A DNA stretch of 62,000 bases from Octopus vulgaris (Eukaryota): positions 117,820,001 to 117,882,000 of the forward strand of contig OX597817.1 of assembly GCA_951406725.2 (NCBI GenBank), read 5' to 3'. Shown here piece after piece: positions 1,515 through 21,986 of this stretch; position 1 is the first letter of the stretch; every line of letters begins with the position of its first letter. The notes below the pieces were generated by a model. That model made no database searches. It saw only the letters and a list, made by a program, of their open reading frames with translations, and was not told the origin of the DNA. The translations under genes were made by a program, and so were the position numbers.

Positions 1515-1606
<92 letters not shown>

Positions 1607-1739
1607 AATAAATGGTGGGGTTGTGTTGACCGCACGTGGAGAAATGATAAGCAAGGAAAAATTGCAAAAATGCAGAATGCTCGATTGAAAGAAAAATTTT
1701 ATGAAATGAGAAAATGAAAAAATATATAAATATATATTT

Positions 1740-1779
1740 ATTCAAACCGGTTTTCGTCATAGTTTGACTTATCAAGAAT
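1740..1779 (-). ncRNA. Minimal type-I hammerhead ribozyme, U3-A8 variant, in PLE copy 1 3' UTR
   Basis: Minus strand ATTC-TTGATAA-GTCA(aacta)TGAC-GAA-AACCGGTT-T-GAAT: 4-bp stem I, 4-bp stem II, palindromic 8-nt stem III. Confidence 0.8.
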
Positions 1780-2454
1780 GAAAAGGTTTTTTAAAAATGA
1801 GAAAGGGGAAAAAAGTTGCATTGTTTTTTGCAAAAGAATAATAATAAATATGTATAAAAATTTTAAAATAAGTACTCCGATACATTGTGAGTTGGTTGTG
1901 TATCTTGAGTTTAATGAATGTTCACGAAAAAATTACCTTGAGGTATTAGGATCCAATGGGATTAAGGCCATGTGTTGTTTGGTTTAATTTAGGATGTTGG
2001 CAAAACAGGAAGTAGTAGTAATTGTGGTTCTTCAGTTCCTGTGTTGTGAATAAGGGGAGACAACTCTTTTGGGTTCTTCAATAAAGGCTGCTGATAAAAT
2101 CCCAAATTATAGAATTGACATTTTAGCTTCATTTGCATTATCTTTTTTATGTAATTGTTTGTTAATTTAACTTTCAGATTTTAACACTTTGTTTATATTA
2201 TTTTCTAATTATATAAATTTGCATAGACAATTGCATTTCAGATTGTTATATCATAAATAATAAAGATGATGGTAATAACAACAATAGTAAAAATGATATT
2301 TAAAGAATATAAGTTTTTGCTGGAAGTGATGAATCTATGGTATCCTTATATATTTGTGTGAGTCCATCCATGAAGAATGAGGTAGAAAAGGGAAGTTTGA
2401 TCAACGAGTAGTTTGTATATTAAGTTCTGTTTGGAATTTTTCAATAAAGATATT

Positions 2455-3468
2455 CTACTTGTTAATTCTCTCCTGTGTGGTGATGCCGTCTTTACATTGG
2501 TAGAAGGGGAATATATAGAATTTGGGGTTTAAGTCTTTAGCGCATGAGTCTATGTGGTCACTCAGTGGAATTTGTCGGTATTCCGGGAGATTTATTTGTT
2601 CTTTATGCACCGCTACCCGTTTACGTAACGGGAGACTCGTTTGTCCAACATAATTATGTTGGCAACCAGCGCATGTGAGAACGTAGATAAGGTTCTCGGA
2701 GGAACAGGAGAAATTAGTCTTGATTTTAAACTTCGTACCTTGTTTGAAGGTAAATTCAGAACTTTCAAGTAGGAGAGGGTATGTCCCACAGTTTGGGCGT
2801 GCACATTTTTTTACTGCTGGGGGTGGATGTGGTGTGTGAAGTTTGGCATTTGTCAAGATTTTTTTTAAAGATTTGTATTGCCTTTTACATTTGAGGATTT
2901 TGTGTGTATTTATAATGTTTTTCATTTTTGGGTCTGTTGACAGTAGACTGAGGTTTTGTATGATTGTGGGGTATGCTTCGATATTTTTGGGGTTGTGGGT
3001 GGAAATGTATGGAAGTATTTTGAGGTTGTGTATGGTGTTAGGTTGGGTAGTTTTCGGTGTAATGTTATCCAGTTCTTTGGCGCGTTTTATTCCATACTCT
3101 ATAACGGTGGAGGGATATTGGCGTTGTAATAGTGTTTTTTTGAGGTCTTGAAGGCGTATTTCTCGTGTATTTGGATCCAAGACGATGGTACATACCCTTT
3201 TAGCCAAATTGAAAGGGATATTTGTCTTGGTGTGTTTTGGGTGGCATGAACTAAAGAGGAGGTATTGTTGTGAGTCTGTGGGTTTGTGGTAGATGTCTGT
3301 TATGATTTGGTTCTTAGGTGCTTTTATAATTAGGAGATCAAGGAATGGTAGATGATGTTTGCTTAATTCCATAGTGAATTGGATGTTGGGATGTATGTTG
3401 TTTAGTAAGGTTTTGAATTCCAGGAGTTTTTCATAAGGTTCTTTCCATATGATGAAACAATAATCCAA
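2455..3468 (-). pseudogene. PLE RT C-terminal half + thumb + GIY-YIG endonuclease (337 aa open frame)
   Basis: IQFTME, LPFLDLLI, TDIYHKPTDSQQYL (PLE RT 6/7/thumb); CARPNCGT Cys motif; LIYVLTCAGCQHNYVGQT (GIY-YIG with CxxC); VH...DH completing CCHH. Catalytic YLDD is mutated to YLDY just upstream and there is a premature TAA near the C-terminus. Confidence 0.9.
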
Positions 3469-3550
3469 ATACCTTTTCCAGTTTTCCTTTATGTAGGTGT
3501 GGAAAACATGTCCAAATTTCTGGCGTGATATTTCATAGAGTATATATAGA

Positions 3551-3614
<64 letters not shown>

Positions 3615-3616
<2 letters not shown>

Positions 3617-3673
3617 TTTTACTCCTTATTCCTTTTTGCAGTCATTTGACTGCGGCTATCCTGGTGCACCACC
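3615..3673 (-). mobile_element. 3' tail fragment of SINE family 1
   Basis: Matches the cagtcatttgactgcggc end of the full copies at 11535 and 21580. Confidence 0.6.
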
Positions 3674-4518
3674 TGTATGTTAATATACATACGCGTGTGT
3701 GTGTGTACACACGCATATGAGACGAACCTGAATTAACGAATTATTTTCAATACTCTAATTATATTCAAAGCATGGTAAATCCATTTTATAATCACTGTTC
3801 TTAAGAAATATGTGTTAATAAATATATGAATATTTATGATATTTATGATACAGTATATGAATTAATAGCTACAAAAGCTGTAACCAAACCAAATAGTAAT
3901 CTTGATCACTACCTTAACGTGGAGGTTCTGTTAAACCACAACCTACTGTGTACATTAGCATGGGAGTATCTCACAGAACTCTTGGTAATTCCTAGTTGTT
4001 AATGTCACTCGCAATTATATAACTGCCATACGTGAATCATCTCCTTCGACCCTGGAACTGCCAGCTCACAAGATTTCACCCTGCTATATATTTCTTAGAG
4101 GGAGATCTCCAGCAGTACAAAGACACCTGAGTGTCCAGTCCGAGAAATATAGAATCTCATTCTCTATTTAGGTACTGGTGTCGCAAATACCCAAAATGTT
4201 TATTGACATATAATTAATACCGATAGAAATAACATTGATTTGTAATGTAATCCAGATCTCCAAATTACGATGGAGGTTTTGTACGAACACAGAATACTGT
4301 GTTATTTACCACAAGAATAATTTACATTTGTACCCATGGTGTAAAAAGCACTTGTTATTATATGGTTGATAGACGAGAATTGTCTGTATTATATTAAATA
4401 CTTTCAATACACTGGTAAATATCTAATTCAGAATGATTCAATGATGCTTATATGTTATATGCAAGGAATGCATACATACAATTCACACTTGTATACATAT
4501 ACATATACATACACATAA

Positions 4519-4572
<54 letters not shown>

Positions 4573-4578
<6 letters not shown>

Positions 4579-4690
4579 ATCACGTGACCGACCAGACCAT
4601 TAGATGTTGCTACACATCGCTGGTCACAATGCGTTCGCATTGTTTTAGCCTTCAAATAACTTCACCCCGCTGGCTAAGCAAGCAGGCCAT
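4573..4690. repeat. Short interspersed repeat fragment between (TA)n tracts (probable LINE/SINE tail)
   Basis: GC-richer 115-nt island starting at cacgtgaccgacc, embedded in microsatellite. Family assignment is recollection only. Confidence 0.35.
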
Positions 4691-11010: not shown

Positions 11011-11534
11011 GCAACAATATTAATATATTTCAGCTTTAAAACCATTCTTACGTTCATAACCAATTGAATCCTCCTGAGAGAGTCCTTATGACGTGTGTTT
11101 GACTCTTCTTTATAGCACAAACTCCATTTTAAGAACAACTGTTTTTAAAACTAAATACTATAAAATTATATCCCAAATTCGGACTACATAAATACTGCAC
11201 GGTAAAGTACACACTAAGAAAACTTATTAAAAAATTGTTCATGAGTCCAGAGATGATTGTATGCGCGTGGACACATACAAACTTACACATACATAAACAC
11301 ACGCGTACACACACACATATTGAATATACTTGTAAAATAGGGATGCGTCTTATTCGAGAATGAGTCATATACATTTGCATCTATGTTTATTGTAGCTATG
11401 TCGGGTTCAAGAATAAAACTGAAGCCGTTTAACGATCTATAGTTTTTGCCTTGATGAGACAATATATATAAAGATACATTGTACATCAACTGTGAATAGA
11501 ATGTAAAGCTAGTTGAACAACATTATTTGATATT

Positions 11535-11741
11535 ACTCTTTTAATTGTTTCAGTCATTTGAGTGTGGCCATGGTGGAGTACTGCCTTTAGTCGAGCGAAT
11601 CGACCCCAGGACACATTCTTTGTAAGTCTAGTACTTATCGGTCTCTTTTGTCGAACTACTAGATTACGGGGGCGTAAAAACACCACCATCGGTTGTCAAG
11701 CAATGTTGGGGGGACAAACACAAACACATAAACACATACAC

Positions 11742-11799
<58 letters not shown>

Positions 11800-11981
11800 A
11801 TATGTATATATATATACACGACGGACTCAATGGGCTTCTTTCAGTTTCCGTCTACCAAATCCGCTCACAAGGCTTTGGTCGGCCCGAGGCTATAGTAAAA
11901 GAGACTAACCCAAGGTGTCACGCAGTGGGGATGAACCCGGAACCATGTAGTTGGTAAGCAAGCTACTTACCACACAGCCAC
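11535..11981 (-). mobile_element. tRNA-derived SINE family 1, full length
   Basis: Minus-strand head GTGGCTGTGTGG (A-box-like) and GGTTCATCC (B-box-like); internal (CA)/(TA) microsatellite; colinear with 12138-12561 and 21580-21986. Confidence 0.9.
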
Positions 11982-12137
11982 TAATGTTAATTTTTTTCAC
12001 CTATTCCATTAACCAAACAGAACAAATTTAGCTAATAACCGTATACAAATCCTATGCCCATTTTAACAGACTCGCACACAAACACAAACACACATGTTGT
12101 CGCACACGTACAAAGCTCTATATATGGGCATATCTGT

Positions 12138-12357
12138 TCTTTTACTCTTTTACTTGCTTCAGTCTTTTTACTTCGGCCGTACTGGAGTACCACCTTTAGT
12201 CCAGGAAATCGACCCCAGGACTTATTCTTTGTAAGCCTAGTACTTATTCTATCGGTCTCTTTTGCCGAACCGCTAAGTTACGGGGACGTAAACACACCAG
12301 CATCGGTTGTCAAGCGATGTTAGGTTTGGGGCAAACACAGACACACAAACATAAACA

Positions 12358-12405
<48 letters not shown>

Positions 12406-12561
12406 TATGACGGGCTTTTTTCAGTTTCCGTCTACCAAATCCACTCACAACGCTTTAATCGGCCCGATGCTATAGCAGAAGACACTTGCCCAAGTTGCCA
12501 CGTAGTGGGACTGATCCCGGAATCATGTGGTTCGTAAGCAAGCTACTTACAACAAAGCCAC
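12138..12561 (-). mobile_element. tRNA-derived SINE family 1, full length
   Basis: Same body as the neighbouring copy, same orientation, ~160 bp apart. Confidence 0.9.
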
Positions 12562-16409: not shown

Positions 16410-16622
16410 GAGAGAGAGAGATAGATAAATGTGACAGCGTGTGTACCGTGTGTACCGCGTGTGTACCGAAAGGGATTATATCACCAACTTCAAATGCGAG
16501 CCTAGCCTTTTTTTGGCTTTCCTAAAATCCATAAAAACAAATACATCACCGAAGCCTGCAAACTCTCTTCTGGCATCCACATCAACATCAAAACACCGGA
16601 GGACCTAAAACTAAGGCCCATC

Positions 16623-17762
16623 GTGGCTGGAACCTCCTGTGAAACACACCGCCTGACTAATTTCCTAGACATCCTTTTGCAACCTTTCCTTACCCACATC
16701 AAATGTTTCATTAGGGATGATCTGGACATGCTCAAACACCTCCCGAAAACAGTTAATGAGGAGGCGCTCCTGGTATCCTTTGATGTCATCAACCTCTACA
16801 CCAACATCCCACATGAATATGGTATTGAGGCAATTGATTTCTGGCTAGAAAAACACCCAGAGACATTCCCTGACCGCATTCACAAGACCTTTATTACGGA
16901 CTCACTCAAGTTCATTCTGACTAACAATTATTTCCTCTTCGACAACACACACTACCGTCAAAACTCTGGTATTGCGATGGGTACCAAGGCTGCACCAGTC
17001 CTTGCGAACCTCGTAATGGGTTTCTTCGAACTATCACTCTATGAGATATCACGCCAGAAATTTGGACATGTTTTCCACACCTACCTAATGGAAAACTGGA
17101 AAAGGTATTTGGATGATTGTTTCATCATATGGAAAGAACCTTATGAAAAACTTCTGGAATTCAACACCATACTGAACAACATACATCCCAACATCCAATT
17201 CACTATGGAATTAAGCAAACATCATCTTCCTTTCCTTGACCTCCTAATTATAAAAACACCTAAGAACCAAATCAAAACAGACATCTACCACAAACCTACA
17301 GACTCACACCAATACCTCCTCTTTAGTTCATGCCACCCAAAACACACCAAGACAAATATCCCTTTCAACTTAGCTAAAAGGGTATGCACCGTTGTCTCTG
17401 ATCCAAAAACTCAAGAAATACGCCTTCAAGACCTCAAAAAAAAAACACTATTACAACGCCAATATCCCTCCACCCTTATAGAACATGGAATAAAACGCGC
17501 CAAAGAACTAGACAACATTACACTGAAAACCACCCAAGCCAACACCACACACAACCCCAAAATACTTCCATACATTTCCACCCACAACCCTAAAAATATC
17601 GAAGCATACACCACAATCATACAAAACATCAGTCTACTGTCAACAGACCCAAAAATGAAAAACATTATAAATACACACAAAATCCTCAAATGTAAAAGGC
17701 AACACAAATCTTTAAAAAAACTCTTGACAAATGCCAAACTTCACACACCACACCACCCCTAG
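16623..17762 (+). pseudogene. PLE reverse transcriptase (379 aa open segment)
   Basis: LVSFDVINLYTNIP, YRQNSGIAMGTKAAPVLANLVM, WKRYLDDCF, IQFTME, LPFLDLLI, TDIYHKPTDSHQYL. A 1-nt deletion relative to copy 1 near 17755 breaks the frame before the EN. Confidence 0.95.
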
Positions 17763-18178
17763 CAGTTAAAAAATGTGCACGCCCAAACTGTGGCACCTGC
17801 CCCTTCCTACTTGAAGGCTCTGAATTTAACTTCAAATAAGGAACGAAGTTTAAAATCAAGACCAACTTCTCCTGTTCCTCCGAGAACCTTATCTACGTTC
17901 TCACATGAGCTGGTTGCCAACATAATTATGTTGGACAAACGAGCCTCCCGTTACGTAAACGAGTAGCGGTGCATAAAGAACAAATAAACCTCCCGGAATA
18001 CCGGCAAATCCCACTGAGTGACCACATAGACTCATGCGCTAAAGACAAAAATCCCAAATTCTACACATTCCCCTTCTACCAATGTAAAGACGGAATCACC
18101 ACACAGGAGAGAATTAAGAAGGAGAATCTCTTTATTGAAAAATTCAAAACGCATCTTAATATGCAAACTCCTCGTTGA
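17760..18178 (+). pseudogene. PLE GIY-YIG endonuclease, disrupted
   Basis: KKCARPNCGTCPFLL...NLIYVLT*AGCQHNYVGQT...VHKEQI...DHIDSC; stops at 17837-17839 (TAA) and 17906-17908 (TGA). Confidence 0.9.
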
Positions 18179-18857
18179 TCATACTTCTTCTTTTTTCTAC
18201 CACATTCTCCATGGATGGACTAACACAAATATATAAGGATACCATGCAGTCATCACCTCAAGCTAAAACTTATATTCTTTAAATATCATTATTATTACTG
18301 TTGTTATTATTATTATTTTTTATTATATATGACATAAGAATCTGAAATGTAATTATAAATTGGTTTATGCAAATTTATATAATTAGAAAACAATATGAAT
18401 AAAGTGTTAAAATCAGAATGTTAAGTTAACAAACAAATTATATAAAAAAGATAATGCAAATGAAGCTAAAATGATAATTTTATAATTTAAGTTTTATCAA
18501 CACCCTTTATTACAAAAAATTGATAAACACAAATTGAAGAGCTTAAAACCCATAGAGTTGTCTCCCCTTATTCACAACACAGGAACGGGACTACCACTAC
18601 TTCCTGTTTTGCCAGGCACTTAAGAGACACTCTTAATTAAATTAAACAACACATGGATTTAATCCCATTGGATCTCAATGCTTCAAGGTAATATTTTCGT
18701 GAACAATCATTAAACTCAAGATACACAAAGACCTTATAATGTATCGGAGTACCTAATTTTTAGTGTTTGTATATATTTATTTTTATTTCTCTGCAAAAAA
18801 CAATTTAATTTTCTTTTTTCCCCCTCCTCACATTTAAAAAAAAAATCTTTTCTTTAC

Positions 18858-18899
18858 AATTCTTGAAAAGTCACATTATGACGAAAACCGGTTTGAATT
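18858..18899 (+). ncRNA. Minimal type-I hammerhead ribozyme, U3-A8 variant, in PLE copy 2 3' UTR
   Basis: AATTC-TTGAAAA-GTCA(catta)TGAC-GAA-AACCGGTT-T-GAATT: 5-bp stem I, 4-bp stem II, palindromic stem III; predicted cut after 18894; sense to the RT ORF. Confidence 0.82.
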
Positions 18900-19053
18900 A
18901 ATATATATATATATTTTATAAAATTTTTCAAAAACGTTTCCATACACCCATTTTCATTAAAATTTTCTTTCAATTTAGCATTCTGCCTTTTTACAATTTT
19001 TCCTTGCTTATCATTTCTCCACGTGCGGTCAACACAACCCCATCATTTATTGA

Positions 19054-19126
<73 letters not shown>

Positions 19127-19128
19127 GA

Positions 19129-19163
<35 letters not shown>

Positions 19164-19265
19164 CATACATACATACATATATAAGTAATGTTCGTAGCCA
19201 CTTCATCGTGGTTTCATATATTACGAGCAGAGGCAAGCTACTGCCATCTCTAGCAGATGAGGCGT

Positions 19266-21579: not shown

Positions 21580-21986
21580 ACTCTTTACTCTTTACTCTTT
21601 ACTTGTTTCAGTCCTTTGACTGCGGCCAGGCTGGAGCGCCGCCTTTAGTCGAGCAAATCGACCCCGGGACTTATTCTTTGGAAGCCTAGTACTTATTCTA
21701 TCGGTCTCTTTTGCCGAACCGCTAAGTGAAGGGGACGCAAACACACCAGCATCGGTTGTCAAGCAATGCTAGAGGACAAACTCAGACAAACATGTACACA
21801 CACATGCATATATATATACATAGGACAGGCTCCTTTCAGTTTCCGTCTACCAAATCCACTCACAAGGCTTTGGTCGTCACGAGGCTATAGAAGAAAACAC
21901 TTGCCCAAGATGCCACGCAGTGGGACTGAACCCGGAACCATGTGGCTGGTTAGCAAGCTACATACTACACAGCCACTCCTGCGCCT
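21580..21986 (-). mobile_element. tRNA-derived SINE family 1, full length
   Basis: B-box-like GGTTCAGTCC on the minus strand; body matches the 11.5 and 12.1 kb copies. Confidence 0.9.

What the first reader, a model, noticed from the sequence alone, without database searches (positions are those of the whole stretch)
18858..18899. U3-A8 covariant hammerhead conserved between two diverged PLE copies
Seen: both copies read UUGA-N-AA instead of CUGA-N-GA. Between them (1740-1779 vs 18858-18899) the differences within the motif fall on N7 (U vs A) and loop II (aacua vs cauua), while stem II, GAAA and the palindrome AACCGGTT are invariant in an otherwise diverged AT-rich UTR. Established: C3 and G8 form a Watson-Crick pair in the active HHR, N7 is the free core position, and a U3-A8 swap can retain activity. 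Inference: a selected, functional ribozyme that standard CUGANGA searches miss, likely acting as a dimer through the 8-nt palindromic stem III to process element RNA ~160 nt from its 3' end.
Basis: partly seen in the sequence, partly recalled or inferred. Interest (0 to 1): 0.8.

Follow-up and report, generated by a model that had tools for sequence, protein, structure and literature searches.

The report
Variant hammerhead ribozyme in Penelope-like retrotransposon
The motif is real: it is the small self-cleaving-RNA (hammerhead) motif that Penelope-like retrotransposons carry near their 3' end, here with a compensated U-A swap in the catalytic core that was first described in 2014, so it is a new example of a known thing and its activity is still untested.

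Summary
The sequence is exactly as described. Window 18858-18899 (+) and 1780-1739 (-) read stem I / UUGANAA / GUCA-loop-UGAC / GAA / AACCGGUU / U / stem I. Both lie about 160 nt from the 3' end of 5'-truncated Penelope-like elements (PLEs; RT plus C-terminal GIY-YIG) inserted in (TA)n.

It is not chance. Shuffled windows gave no hits, and the 2.8-Gb genome holds 847 exact copies against 0 for the control pattern.

Related PLEs (ORF 44-55% identical; Argonauta hians and other assemblies) have 3' UTRs that cannot be aligned to this one. Each still carries a minimal hammerhead at the same place. Six read CUGAUGA (C3-G8), one reads U3.G8, and helix III is always a palindrome (ACCGGU or ACUAGU). 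This supports shared descent, a true 3-8 covariation and the dimer model.

Three caveats apply:
- The U3-A8 PLE hammerhead was published in 2014 (Cervera and de la Peña, Schistosoma Cercyon, about 1,300 hits).
- Within this family the motif is no better conserved than the rest of the UTR.
- 70% of intact motifs, including the youngest copies with intact ORFs, have lost one U. They have no free cleavage-site nucleotide unless an A bulges.

Catalysis is untested. Verdict: new member of a known kind, modest interest.

The parts
18858..18899 (+). Minimal type I hammerhead motif of PLE copy B: stem I AAUUC/GAAUU (18858-62 / 18895-99), core UUGAAAA (18863-69; U3 = 18863, A8 = 18868, N7 = 18867), stem II GUCA-CAUUA-UGAC (18870-82), G12 A13 A14 (18883-85), helix III palindrome AACCGGUU (18886-93), U17 (18894). 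The predicted scissile bond lies between 18894 and 18895.
1739..1780 (-). The same motif in PLE copy A, read on the minus strand: (C)AUUC 1780-1776, core UUGAUAA 1775-1769, stem II GUCA-AACUA-UGAC 1768-1756, GAA 1755-1753, AACCGGUU 1752-1745, U17 1744, GAAU(A) 1743-1739. The outermost stem I pair is a C.A mismatch in this copy.
16468..19055 (+). PLE copy B, 5'-truncated. It matches positions ~2088-4614 of the 4614-bp full-length unit. The RT and GIY-YIG ORF is broken by a stop or frameshift near 17762. It is flanked by (TA)n/(GA)n on both sides.
1603..3541 (-). PLE copy A, 5'-truncated and in inverted orientation. The C-terminal ORF with GIY-YIG is at 2455-3468. It belongs to a different subfamily (N7 = U, loop AACUA). 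It is flanked by (TA)n and (GA)n.
18994..19055 (+). 3'-terminal block of the element, with one mismatch between the two copies (counterpart 1603-1664 on the minus strand). It contains the AC-rich stretch CAACACAACCCCA and ends ...AUUUAUUGAUC directly before (TA)n. It is a candidate site for initiation of reverse transcription, by analogy only.
   Evidence: analogy to PMC11167929; no stable fold predicted
19056..19190 (.). (TA)n microsatellite at the 3' junction of copy B, the target-site type of this PLE family.

Best explanation
The motif is the minimal, dimer-type hammerhead ribozyme (HHR) motif that Penelope-like retrotransposons carry in their pseudo-LTR. Here the pseudo-LTR is the last ~330 nt of a 4.6-kb element with two ORFs that targets (TA)n.

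What it is:
- In this genome (probably an octopod's) the core pair C3-G8 is replaced by the isosteric pair U3-A8.
- Helix III has no loop. It is an 8-nt palindrome that can form only between two copies of the motif.

Proposed mechanism (inferred, not shown):
- In transcripts that run through a pseudo-LTR plus a full-length unit, or through tandem units, two motifs lie 4614 nt apart. Two element RNAs could also pair in trans.
- The palindromes pair. Each half then folds with its own stem I (5 AU-rich bp) and stem II (GUCA/UGAC). The RNA is cut after U17 (window 18894/18895), giving a 5'-OH and a 2',3'-cyclic phosphate.
- Activity is probably slow and may need the element's protein, as in other PLE hammerheads.

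Steps that are shown: identity as a PLE; position in the pseudo-LTR; descent from or equivalence to canonical hammerheads of related PLEs; covariation at 3-8, in stem I and in the helix III palindrome.

Steps that are inferred: catalysis, dimerisation in vivo, and any role in the transposition cycle. Cleavage is evidently not indispensable for amplification, because the youngest and most abundant subfamilies lack a free N17.
For: - PLE identity: RVT_1 and GIY-YIG hits. The zinc-finger linker CX5CxxC and a CCHH-type endonuclease domain are read directly from the translation.
- Full-length architecture: (TA)n | 334-bp 3' fragment with HHR | 4614-bp unit with ORF1, ORF2 and a second HHR 176 nt from the end | (TA)n. 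Three loci show tandem HHR spacing of 4613-4616 bp.
- All hammerhead rules are met in both window copies once U3-A8 is allowed.
- 847 genomic copies against 0 for the control.
- Among subfamilies, N7 is A, U or C and loop II has five versions. The core, stem II and palindrome are fixed. Stem I pair 2.5/1.5 switches A-U to U-A.
- All seven loci of related PLEs carry a min-HHR between the stop codon and the (TA)n end. Six have CUGAUGA and one has U3.G8. L085 also has a second, upstream motif with U3-A8. Helix III is ACCGGU or ACUAGU, and stem I differs in each.
- Their UTRs share no blastn-detectable similarity with the window's UTR.
- A second, older repeat family in this genome has the same U3-A8 core with a different 10-nt palindrome (ACAUCGAUGU) and a GC-rich stem I with compensatory changes.
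- RNAcofold: monomer -2.5 kcal/mol, dimer -19.1 kcal/mol, with an intermolecular helix over the palindrome.
- Literature: U3-A8 min-HHRs in PLE pseudo-LTRs, dimer model, weak activity (PMC4209133). C3/G8 compensatory mutants restore activity in the Anolis PLE hammerhead, which is protein-assisted (PMC11167929).
Against: - No cleavage data exist for this motif.
- Within family 1 the motif is not a conservation peak.
- 587 of 847 intact motifs (nearly all of them in the N7 = C subfamilies) read GAAAACCGGUU-GAAU. Either N17 is missing or an extra A sits between A14 and A15.1. These subfamilies are the youngest, 91-98% identical within a subfamily, and have intact ORF2.
- Stem I is thermodynamically marginal, costing +1.2 kcal/mol on top of stem II.
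- The MFE dimer extends the palindrome to AAACCGGUUU, pairing A14 with U17. That would compete with the active core.
- Rfam hammerhead models give no hit even at E <= 10.
- In the window both copies are solo, 5'-truncated and on opposite strands, so neither has a partner in cis.
- HHR mutants do not impair PLE insertion in vitro. Naiad PLEs thrive without HHRs (PMC8557442).
Confidence: 0.7

Rival explanations
1. Catalytically dead relic. The motif descends from a PLE hammerhead but no longer cleaves. It persists because the family is young, or because the hairpin plus palindrome serves another RNA-level role, such as dimerisation of element RNAs or protein binding in the pseudo-LTR.
For: - The dominant, youngest subfamilies lack a free N17.
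- There is no conservation excess within the family.
- Stem I is weak, and the extended AAACCGGUUU pairing sequesters A14 and U17.
- HHR cleavage is dispensable for insertion in vitro. PLEs without HHRs proliferate.
- Metazoan min-HHRs cleave poorly in vitro.
Against: - Both core changes are exactly compensatory.
- U3-A8 recurs in an independent repeat family in this genome, in a PLE from another assembly (L085, upstream motif) and in Schistosoma.
- U4, G5, A6, A9 and G12-A14 are all intact.
- Variation among subfamilies is confined to N7, loop II and a compensated stem I pair.
- Single mutants are at the ~1% level expected for post-insertion decay and form no subfamily.
Confidence: 0.25
2. 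A DNA-level or protein-binding element. The conserved AACCGGTT palindrome and the adjacent hairpin are a binding site, for example for the element's endonuclease or RT or for a host factor. The hammerhead likeness is incidental.
For: The palindrome and stem II are invariant in 847 copies. No direct evidence was found.
Against: - Relatives keep the palindromic character but not the sequence (ACCGGU, ACUAGU, ACAUCGAUGU). They always keep it together with the UGA...GAAA core boxes, a stem II and a matching stem I.
- That pattern is what RNA structure predicts, not a sequence-specific DNA site.
Confidence: 0.04
3. Chance resemblance in AT-rich sequence, made to fit by relaxing two core positions after the fact.
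For: The region is AT-rich, and Rfam does not recognise it.
Against: - 0 hits in 30 shuffled windows.
- 847 genomic copies against 0 for the control.
- A canonical hammerhead sits at the homologous position in all related PLEs examined.
Confidence: 0.01

Closest known systems
U3-A8 minimal hammerheads of Cercyon PLEs in Schistosoma mansoni (Cervera and de la Peña 2014, Mol Biol Evol 31:2941; PMC4209133)
   Same: - Type I minimal hammerhead in the pseudo-LTR of a Penelope-like element.
- U3-A8 in place of C3-G8.
- G10.1-C11.1 kept.
- Palindromic helix III with no stable monomeric hairpin, so a dimeric active form is proposed.
- Hundreds to thousands of copies per genome.
   Different: - The host is a probable octopod mollusc rather than a flatworm, and the PLE lineage differs.
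- There is no extra nucleotide between A9 and G10.1 in the window's family.
- Helix III is an 8-nt palindrome, AACCGGUU.
- Most family members have lost N17.
- No activity data exist here.
Hammerhead of the Poseidon PLE of Anolis carolinensis (PAc; Frangieh et al. 2024, Mob DNA 15:12; PMC11167929)
   Same: - A PLE-borne hammerhead in the repeated terminal region.
- The 3-8 pair is shown to be a functional Watson-Crick pair: single mutants kill activity and the double mutant partly restores it.
- AT-rich target DNA and an AC-rich 3' region.
   Different: - PAc has the canonical C3-G8 pair, and its motif overlaps the ORF start.
- Cleavage there needed the element's protein and was not required for insertion in vitro.
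- Nothing comparable was tested for the present motif.
Double-hammerhead (dimeric) ribozymes of newt satellite 2 and avocado sunblotch viroid (Forster et al. 1988, cited in PMC4209133), and the PLE-associated dimeric variants of Lünse et al. 2017 (title seen only as a citation; content from memory)
   Same: Helix III is too short or has no loop, so only two motifs together form an extended helix III and an active core.
   Different: Those motifs have canonical C3-G8 cores and a short hairpin with a small palindromic loop. Here helix III has no loop at all, and the core pair is swapped.
Metazoan non-LTR retrozymes, small tandem repeats with type I hammerheads (de la Peña and co-workers 2020, PMC7229834; Li et al. 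2026 bioRxiv 10.64898/2026.07.22.740005)
   Same: This genome also holds a short (~250-350 bp) repeat, in tandem or inverted arrays, with a U3-A8 hammerhead that shares stem II with the PLE motif. That fits the idea that such repeats derive from PLE pseudo-LTRs.
   Different: The finding itself lies in an autonomous PLE, not in a retrozyme. Circular RNAs were not examined.

Membership tests
Hammerhead ribozyme (type I, PLE minimal or dimeric form) | Invariant core nucleotides U4 G5 A6, A9, G12 A13 A14 and the A15.1-U16.1 pair | tested here: met
   All are present in both window copies and in all five subfamilies.
Hammerhead ribozyme (type I, PLE minimal or dimeric form) | C3 and G8, which form a Watson-Crick pair in the active fold | tested here: inconclusive
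   The identities are not met (U3, A8), but a Watson-Crick pair is kept. Relatives at the homologous site have C3-G8. The U3-A8 variant is documented in PLEs (PMC4209133). Whether this version is active was not testable.
Hammerhead ribozyme (type I, PLE minimal or dimeric form) | A non-G nucleotide at the cleavage site (H17) after U16.1 | tested here: met
   U17 is present in both window copies (18894; 1744 on the minus strand). It is not met in 587 of 847 family members, which read AACCGGUU-G.
Hammerhead ribozyme (type I, PLE minimal or dimeric form) | Three helices around the core, supported by covariation | tested here: met
   - Stem II is 4 bp with G10.1-C11.1.
- Stem I is 5 bp, with an A-U to U-A switch among subfamilies and different sequences in relatives.
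- Helix III is a palindrome that differs between lineages.
- Stem I is thermodynamically marginal.
Hammerhead ribozyme (type I, PLE minimal or dimeric form) | Match to the curated covariance model (Rfam RF00163 or other hammerhead models) | tested here: not met
   No hammerhead hit at gathering score, or at E <= 10 on 201 nt. This is expected for a helix III with no loop and a swapped core pair. Canonical hits do exist elsewhere in the genome.
Hammerhead ribozyme (type I, PLE minimal or dimeric form) | Site-specific self-cleavage giving 2',3'-cyclic phosphate and 5'-OH ends | not testable with these tools
   No transcript or biochemical data are available.
Penelope-like element (canonical, C-terminal endonuclease) | Single polyprotein with RT followed by a GIY-YIG endonuclease, with a Cys linker and a CCHH motif | tested here: met
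   RVT_1 and GIY-YIG in ORF2. CARPNCGTC linker and C..C/H..H in the endonuclease domain are read from the translation. The CCHH motif argues against the Hydra clade.
Penelope-like element (canonical, C-terminal endonuclease) | Pseudo-LTR, partial tandem and head-to-head inverted 5'-truncated insertions, with a hammerhead inside the pseudo-LTR | tested here: met
   - L090-L092: a 334-bp 3' fragment directly precedes a full-length 4614-bp unit.
- There are many minus/plus motif pairs 0.1-4.6 kb apart.
- L068 shows an inverted junction inside the motif.
- This matches the description in PMC8557442.

The most novel reading that the evidence does not exclude
The youngest and most prolific subfamilies have intact ORF2 and 587 exact motif copies. 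They carry UUGACAA...GAAAACCGGUU-GAAU, a U3-A8 core with one U fewer. Two readings are open.

(a) This is a still-active hammerhead with a core topology not described before: an A bulged between A14 and A15.1, a 6-bp ACCGGU helix III and U17.

(b) It is a natural knock-out of the cleavage site in an actively amplifying PLE lineage. That would be in vivo evidence that hammerhead cleavage is dispensable for PLE retrotransposition, while the dimer-forming palindrome is retained.

The probability given is for reading (a).
Probability: 0.2. Interest if true: 0.55.

Novelty: new member of a known kind. Interest (0 to 1): 0.3.

Why it matters
The role of hammerheads in Penelope-like elements is still unknown. 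This genome offers a compact natural series inside one PLE clade:
- canonical C3-G8 motifs in relatives;
- a U3.G8 intermediate in one Argonauta copy;
- fixed U3-A8 in about 850 copies here;
- a very successful sub-lineage that has lost the cleavage-site nucleotide but kept the palindrome.

That series makes two questions directly testable with a handful of transcripts. Is U3-A8 fully functional in a minimal dimeric hammerhead? Is cleavage, as opposed to RNA dimerisation, needed by the element?

It also shows concretely that descriptor or Rfam searches tied to CUGANGA and a helix III hairpin undercount these motifs. As a discovery it is incremental, because the variant and the dimer model were published in 2014.

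Tried and rejected
- Rfam at gathering score on the whole window, and at E <= 10 on 18780-18980: no hammerhead hit. This is uninformative for this motif type.
- A within-family test of 3-8 covariation by exhaustive pattern counts. Family 1 has 7 copies with C3 (all C3.A8; two of the seven, both in locus L068, sit at the junction of an inverted, 5'-truncated copy and are not point mutants) and 0 with C3-G8. For all motifs with a GUCA stem II there are 3 C3-G8 (control 2) and 9 U3.G8. U3-A8 was therefore fixed before the family expanded, and these counts show only neutral decay. Covariation had to come from other lineages.
- A conservation profile over five subfamilies: the motif is not a peak.
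- A search for an ancestral version with three A's (GAAACCGGT) and the same stem II: only 6 sporadic copies.
- A G17 register for the 2-T variant, prompted by PMC3884650. Rejected because stem I would then be out of register.
- The Hydra clade of PLEs, which also targets (TA)n. Rejected because the endonuclease domain keeps CCHH and the linker is CX5CxxC.
- The idea that the two window copies are one head-to-head insertion. Rejected because they belong to different subfamilies and lie 12.9 kb apart, each with its own (TA)n flanks.
- A fold of the conserved 3'-terminal block: no structure beyond shuffles, z = 0.21.
- Przybilski and Hammann 2007 on the tolerance of C3-G8 exchanges is not held in the library. 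It is cited only through reference lists and from memory.

Full report
**1. What is in the sequence**

Window 18858-18899 (+) reads AAUUC UUGAAAA GUCA-CAUUA-UGAC GAA AACCGGUU U GAAUU. The reverse complement of 1739-1780 reads (C)AUUC UUGAUAA GUCA-AACUA-UGAC GAA AACCGGUU U GAAU(A).

In hammerhead numbering this gives:
- stem I, 5 bp in copy B and 4 bp in copy A
- U3 U4 G5 A6 N7 A8 A9
- stem II, 4 bp with G10.1-C11.1
- G12 A13 A14
- helix III, A15.1...U16.1, an 8-nt palindrome with no loop
- U17
- the 3' strand of stem I

It found only these two sites in the 62 kb. Thirty Markov shuffles gave none that also had a palindrome of at least 8 nt, a stem II of at least 4 bp and a stem I of at least 4 bp, as both real sites do. 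Rfam reports no hammerhead at gathering score, and none at E <= 10 on the 201 nt around the site.

**2. Context**

The two sites lie in two inverted copies of one retrotransposon family.
- Copy B spans 16468-19055 (+).
- Copy A spans 3541-1603 (-).
- The ORFs give RVT_1 and a weak, sub-threshold GIY-YIG match. The GIY-YIG match recurs in the intact ORF2 of a full-length copy.
- The translation shows PKIHK, a CX5CxxC linker and a CCHH-type GIY-YIG domain.

This is a canonical Penelope-like element (PLE) with a C-terminal endonuclease. It is not the Hydra clade.

Both copies are 5'-truncated and sit in (TA)n/(GA)n microsatellites. They belong to different subfamilies and are not one insertion.

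The window comes from a 2.8-Gb assembly of 227 contigs. The closest named homologues of the ORF are from Argonauta hians at 52-55% identity. The host is therefore probably an octopod. This is an inference.

**3. The family in the genome**

The exact pattern YTGANRAGTCA-N4-6-TGACGAAAACCGGTT occurs 847 times, against 0 for the reversed control.

Subfamilies differ at N7 (A, U or C) and in loop II (CAUUA, AACUA, CACUA, UACAA, UACAU). The core, stem II and palindrome are constant. Stem I pair 2.5/1.5 is A-U in one subfamily and U-A in the others.

Full-length copies show the typical PLE layout (locus L090):
- (TA)n;
- a 334-bp 3' fragment (the pseudo-LTR) that carries the motif;
- directly after it, a 4614-bp unit with ORF1 (378 aa), ORF2 (714-752 aa, RT plus GIY-YIG, intact) and a second motif 176 nt from the end;
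- (TA)n.

Three loci have tandem motifs 4613-4616 bp apart. Many motif pairs are head-to-head. The motif therefore lies in the pseudo-LTR, where PLE hammerheads are known to lie (PMC8557442). Read-through transcripts would carry two motifs.

**4. Is it selected?**

*Within the family the evidence is weak.*
- The five subfamilies are close relatives.
- The 42-nt motif window is 83% invariant, against a UTR mean of 76 +/- 16%. It ranks 216 of 686 windows. Several other blocks and the 3'-terminal ~62 nt are better conserved.
- Single mutants are rare and look like neutral decay: 7 copies with C3, two of which, both in locus L068, sit at the junction of an inverted, 5'-truncated copy, and 8 U3.G8. 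There is no C3-G8 copy.

*The strong evidence comes from outside the family.*
- I fetched seven loci that encode ORF homologues of 44-55% identity. They come from Argonauta hians and five ENA assemblies of unknown organisms.
- Every one has a minimal hammerhead between the stop codon and the 3' end. Where a (TA)n run follows, the motif starts 76-201 nt before it.
- Six read CUGAUGA (C3-G8). One Argonauta copy reads UUGAUGA (U3.G8).
- L085 also carries an upstream motif with UUGAAAA (U3-A8), a good stem I (GGCU/AGCC) and a good stem II.
- Helix III is always a palindrome (ACCGGU or ACUAGU). Stem I and stem II differ in sequence.
- The relatives' UTRs show no blastn similarity to the window's UTR at word size 7 and E <= 1.

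The hammerhead architecture is thus the only recognisable feature that survives in these UTRs. The 3-8 pair, stem I and the helix III palindrome all covary.

A second, older repeat family in this genome (65-80% identity, 250-350-bp units in tandem or inverted arrays, no PLE ORF nearby) has the same U3-A8 core and stem II. Its palindrome is 10 nt (ACAUCGAUGU), and its 6-bp GC-rich stem I shows compensatory changes.

Canonical C3-G8 type I hammerheads also exist in the genome.

**5. The complication**

587 of the 847 intact motifs read GAAAACCGGUU-GAAU, with two U's instead of three. These are nearly all in the N7 = C subfamilies. Those subfamilies are the youngest, 91-98% identical within a subfamily, and include the full-length copies with intact ORF2.

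The alternative register is the relatives' ACCGGU helix III followed by U17. It needs an extra A between A14 and A15.1.

Either the recently active lineage has lost cleavage, or it uses a core variant that has not been described. The two window copies are of the older 3-T type and do obey all the rules.

**6. Energetics**

RNAcofold gives -2.5 kcal/mol for the monomer, which forms stem II only. The dimer gives -19.1 kcal/mol, with both stem II hairpins and an intermolecular helix.

That helix extends to AAACCGGUUU, so it includes A14 and U17. This would compete with the active core. Adding stem I to stem II costs +1.2 kcal/mol. The motif should therefore dimerise readily. Its catalytic fold would need tertiary or protein help. 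That is consistent with the low activity of metazoan PLE min-HHRs and with the protein-assisted hammerhead of the Anolis PLE.

**7. Comparison with what is known**

Cervera and de la Peña (2014, PMC4209133) described all of the following:
- minimal hammerheads in the pseudo-LTRs of all PLEs they examined;
- the palindromic helix III and the dimer model;
- low cleavage in vitro;

Frangieh et al. (2024, PMC11167929) showed compensatory rescue at C3/G8 in an Anolis PLE hammerhead. They also showed that cleavage was not needed for insertion in vitro.

Craig et al. (2021, PMC8557442) note that the function of PLE hammerheads is unclear and that PLEs lacking them proliferate.

The finding is therefore a correct rediscovery in a new host and a new PLE lineage. 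I found no paper in the library that links hammerheads, Penelope and octopus beyond Craig et al..

**8. Verdict**

- It is a genuine hammerhead-type motif under architectural selection in this PLE clade, with a true U3-A8 covariation and a dimer-type helix III.
- Catalysis is untested.
- The within-family conservation argument fails.
- The dominant young subfamily lacks the cleavage-site nucleotide.
- The phenomenon is already published.

Novelty: new member of a known kind. Interest: 0.3. The 2-T lineage is the one aspect that could be more than incremental.

Noticed in passing
G000 genome-wide; e.g. L031-L040, L090-L092 (not in the window): 70% of intact motifs (587 of 847) have GAAAACCGGUU-GAAU, one U fewer than the window copies. 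These are nearly all in the N7 = C subfamilies, which are the youngest and have intact ORF2. Either there is no free N17, or an A is bulged after A14.
   Followed up: partly
L051-L067; the nearest copy is G000:C4:117747491-117747524, ~72 kb upstream of the window: A second, older repeat family of 250-350-bp units in tandem or inverted arrays, 65-80% identical, with no PLE ORF within 3 kb upstream of the motif. It carries a U3-A8 hammerhead: UUGAYAA GUCA-N6-UGAC GAA ACAUCGAUGU H, with a GC-rich 6-bp stem I that shows compensatory changes. It looks like a retrozyme or a non-autonomous derivative of a pseudo-LTR. Its C3.A8 copies mostly have N7 = C, which suggests a route through CpG decay.
   Followed up: partly
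L090:1247-2380 (also L091, L092); relatives L084:886-1935 and L088:4806-6173: This PLE clade has a conserved upstream ORF1 (~380 aa, no Pfam hit). It is 35% identical over 187 aa to the ORFs upstream of the RT-EN ORF in related elements from other assemblies (E 1e-35 to 1e-38). PLEs are usually described as single-ORF elements.
   Followed up: partly
window 18994-19055 (+) and 1603-1664 (-): The last ~62 nt of the element are the best-conserved part between the two copies, with one mismatch. The block contains an AC-rich stretch (CAACACAACCCCA) just before (TA)n. It may be the site where reverse transcription starts, by analogy with the Anolis PLE. No stable fold is predicted (z = 0.21).
   Followed up: partly
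L085:2185-2235 and L085:4663-4700 (ENA assembly ERZ25069870): In a related PLE from another organism, the motif upstream of the ORFs has U3-A8 (UUGAAAA) and the one downstream has C3-G8 (CUGAUGA). Both have the ACCGGU palindrome. One Argonauta hians copy (L086) has U3.G8.
   Followed up: no
L068 (G000:C1:94342412-94343030): Very short inverted 5'-truncated copies are joined inside the hammerhead itself. The reverse complement of the motif abuts ACAAGUC..., with CTG at the junction. These copies mimic C3 point mutants in pattern counts.
   Followed up: partly
window 11533-12561 and 21591-21976: Another dispersed repeat: three copies of a ~450-nt unit, 81-89% identical, containing ...TATCGGTCTCTTTTGCCGAAC...GGGGACGTAAACACACCAGCATCGGTTGTCAAGC.... 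It is unrelated to the PLE and was not identified.
   Followed up: no
L071-L082 (G000, several chromosomes): Canonical type I hammerheads reach Rfam's gathering score in this genome. One example is CUGAAGA GACCC-AGAACA-GGGUC GAA ACAUGUGU U GUAC, a third family with a C3-G8 core. Only 73 of 263,122 first-look candidates were scored, so the true number is unknown.
   Followed up: no
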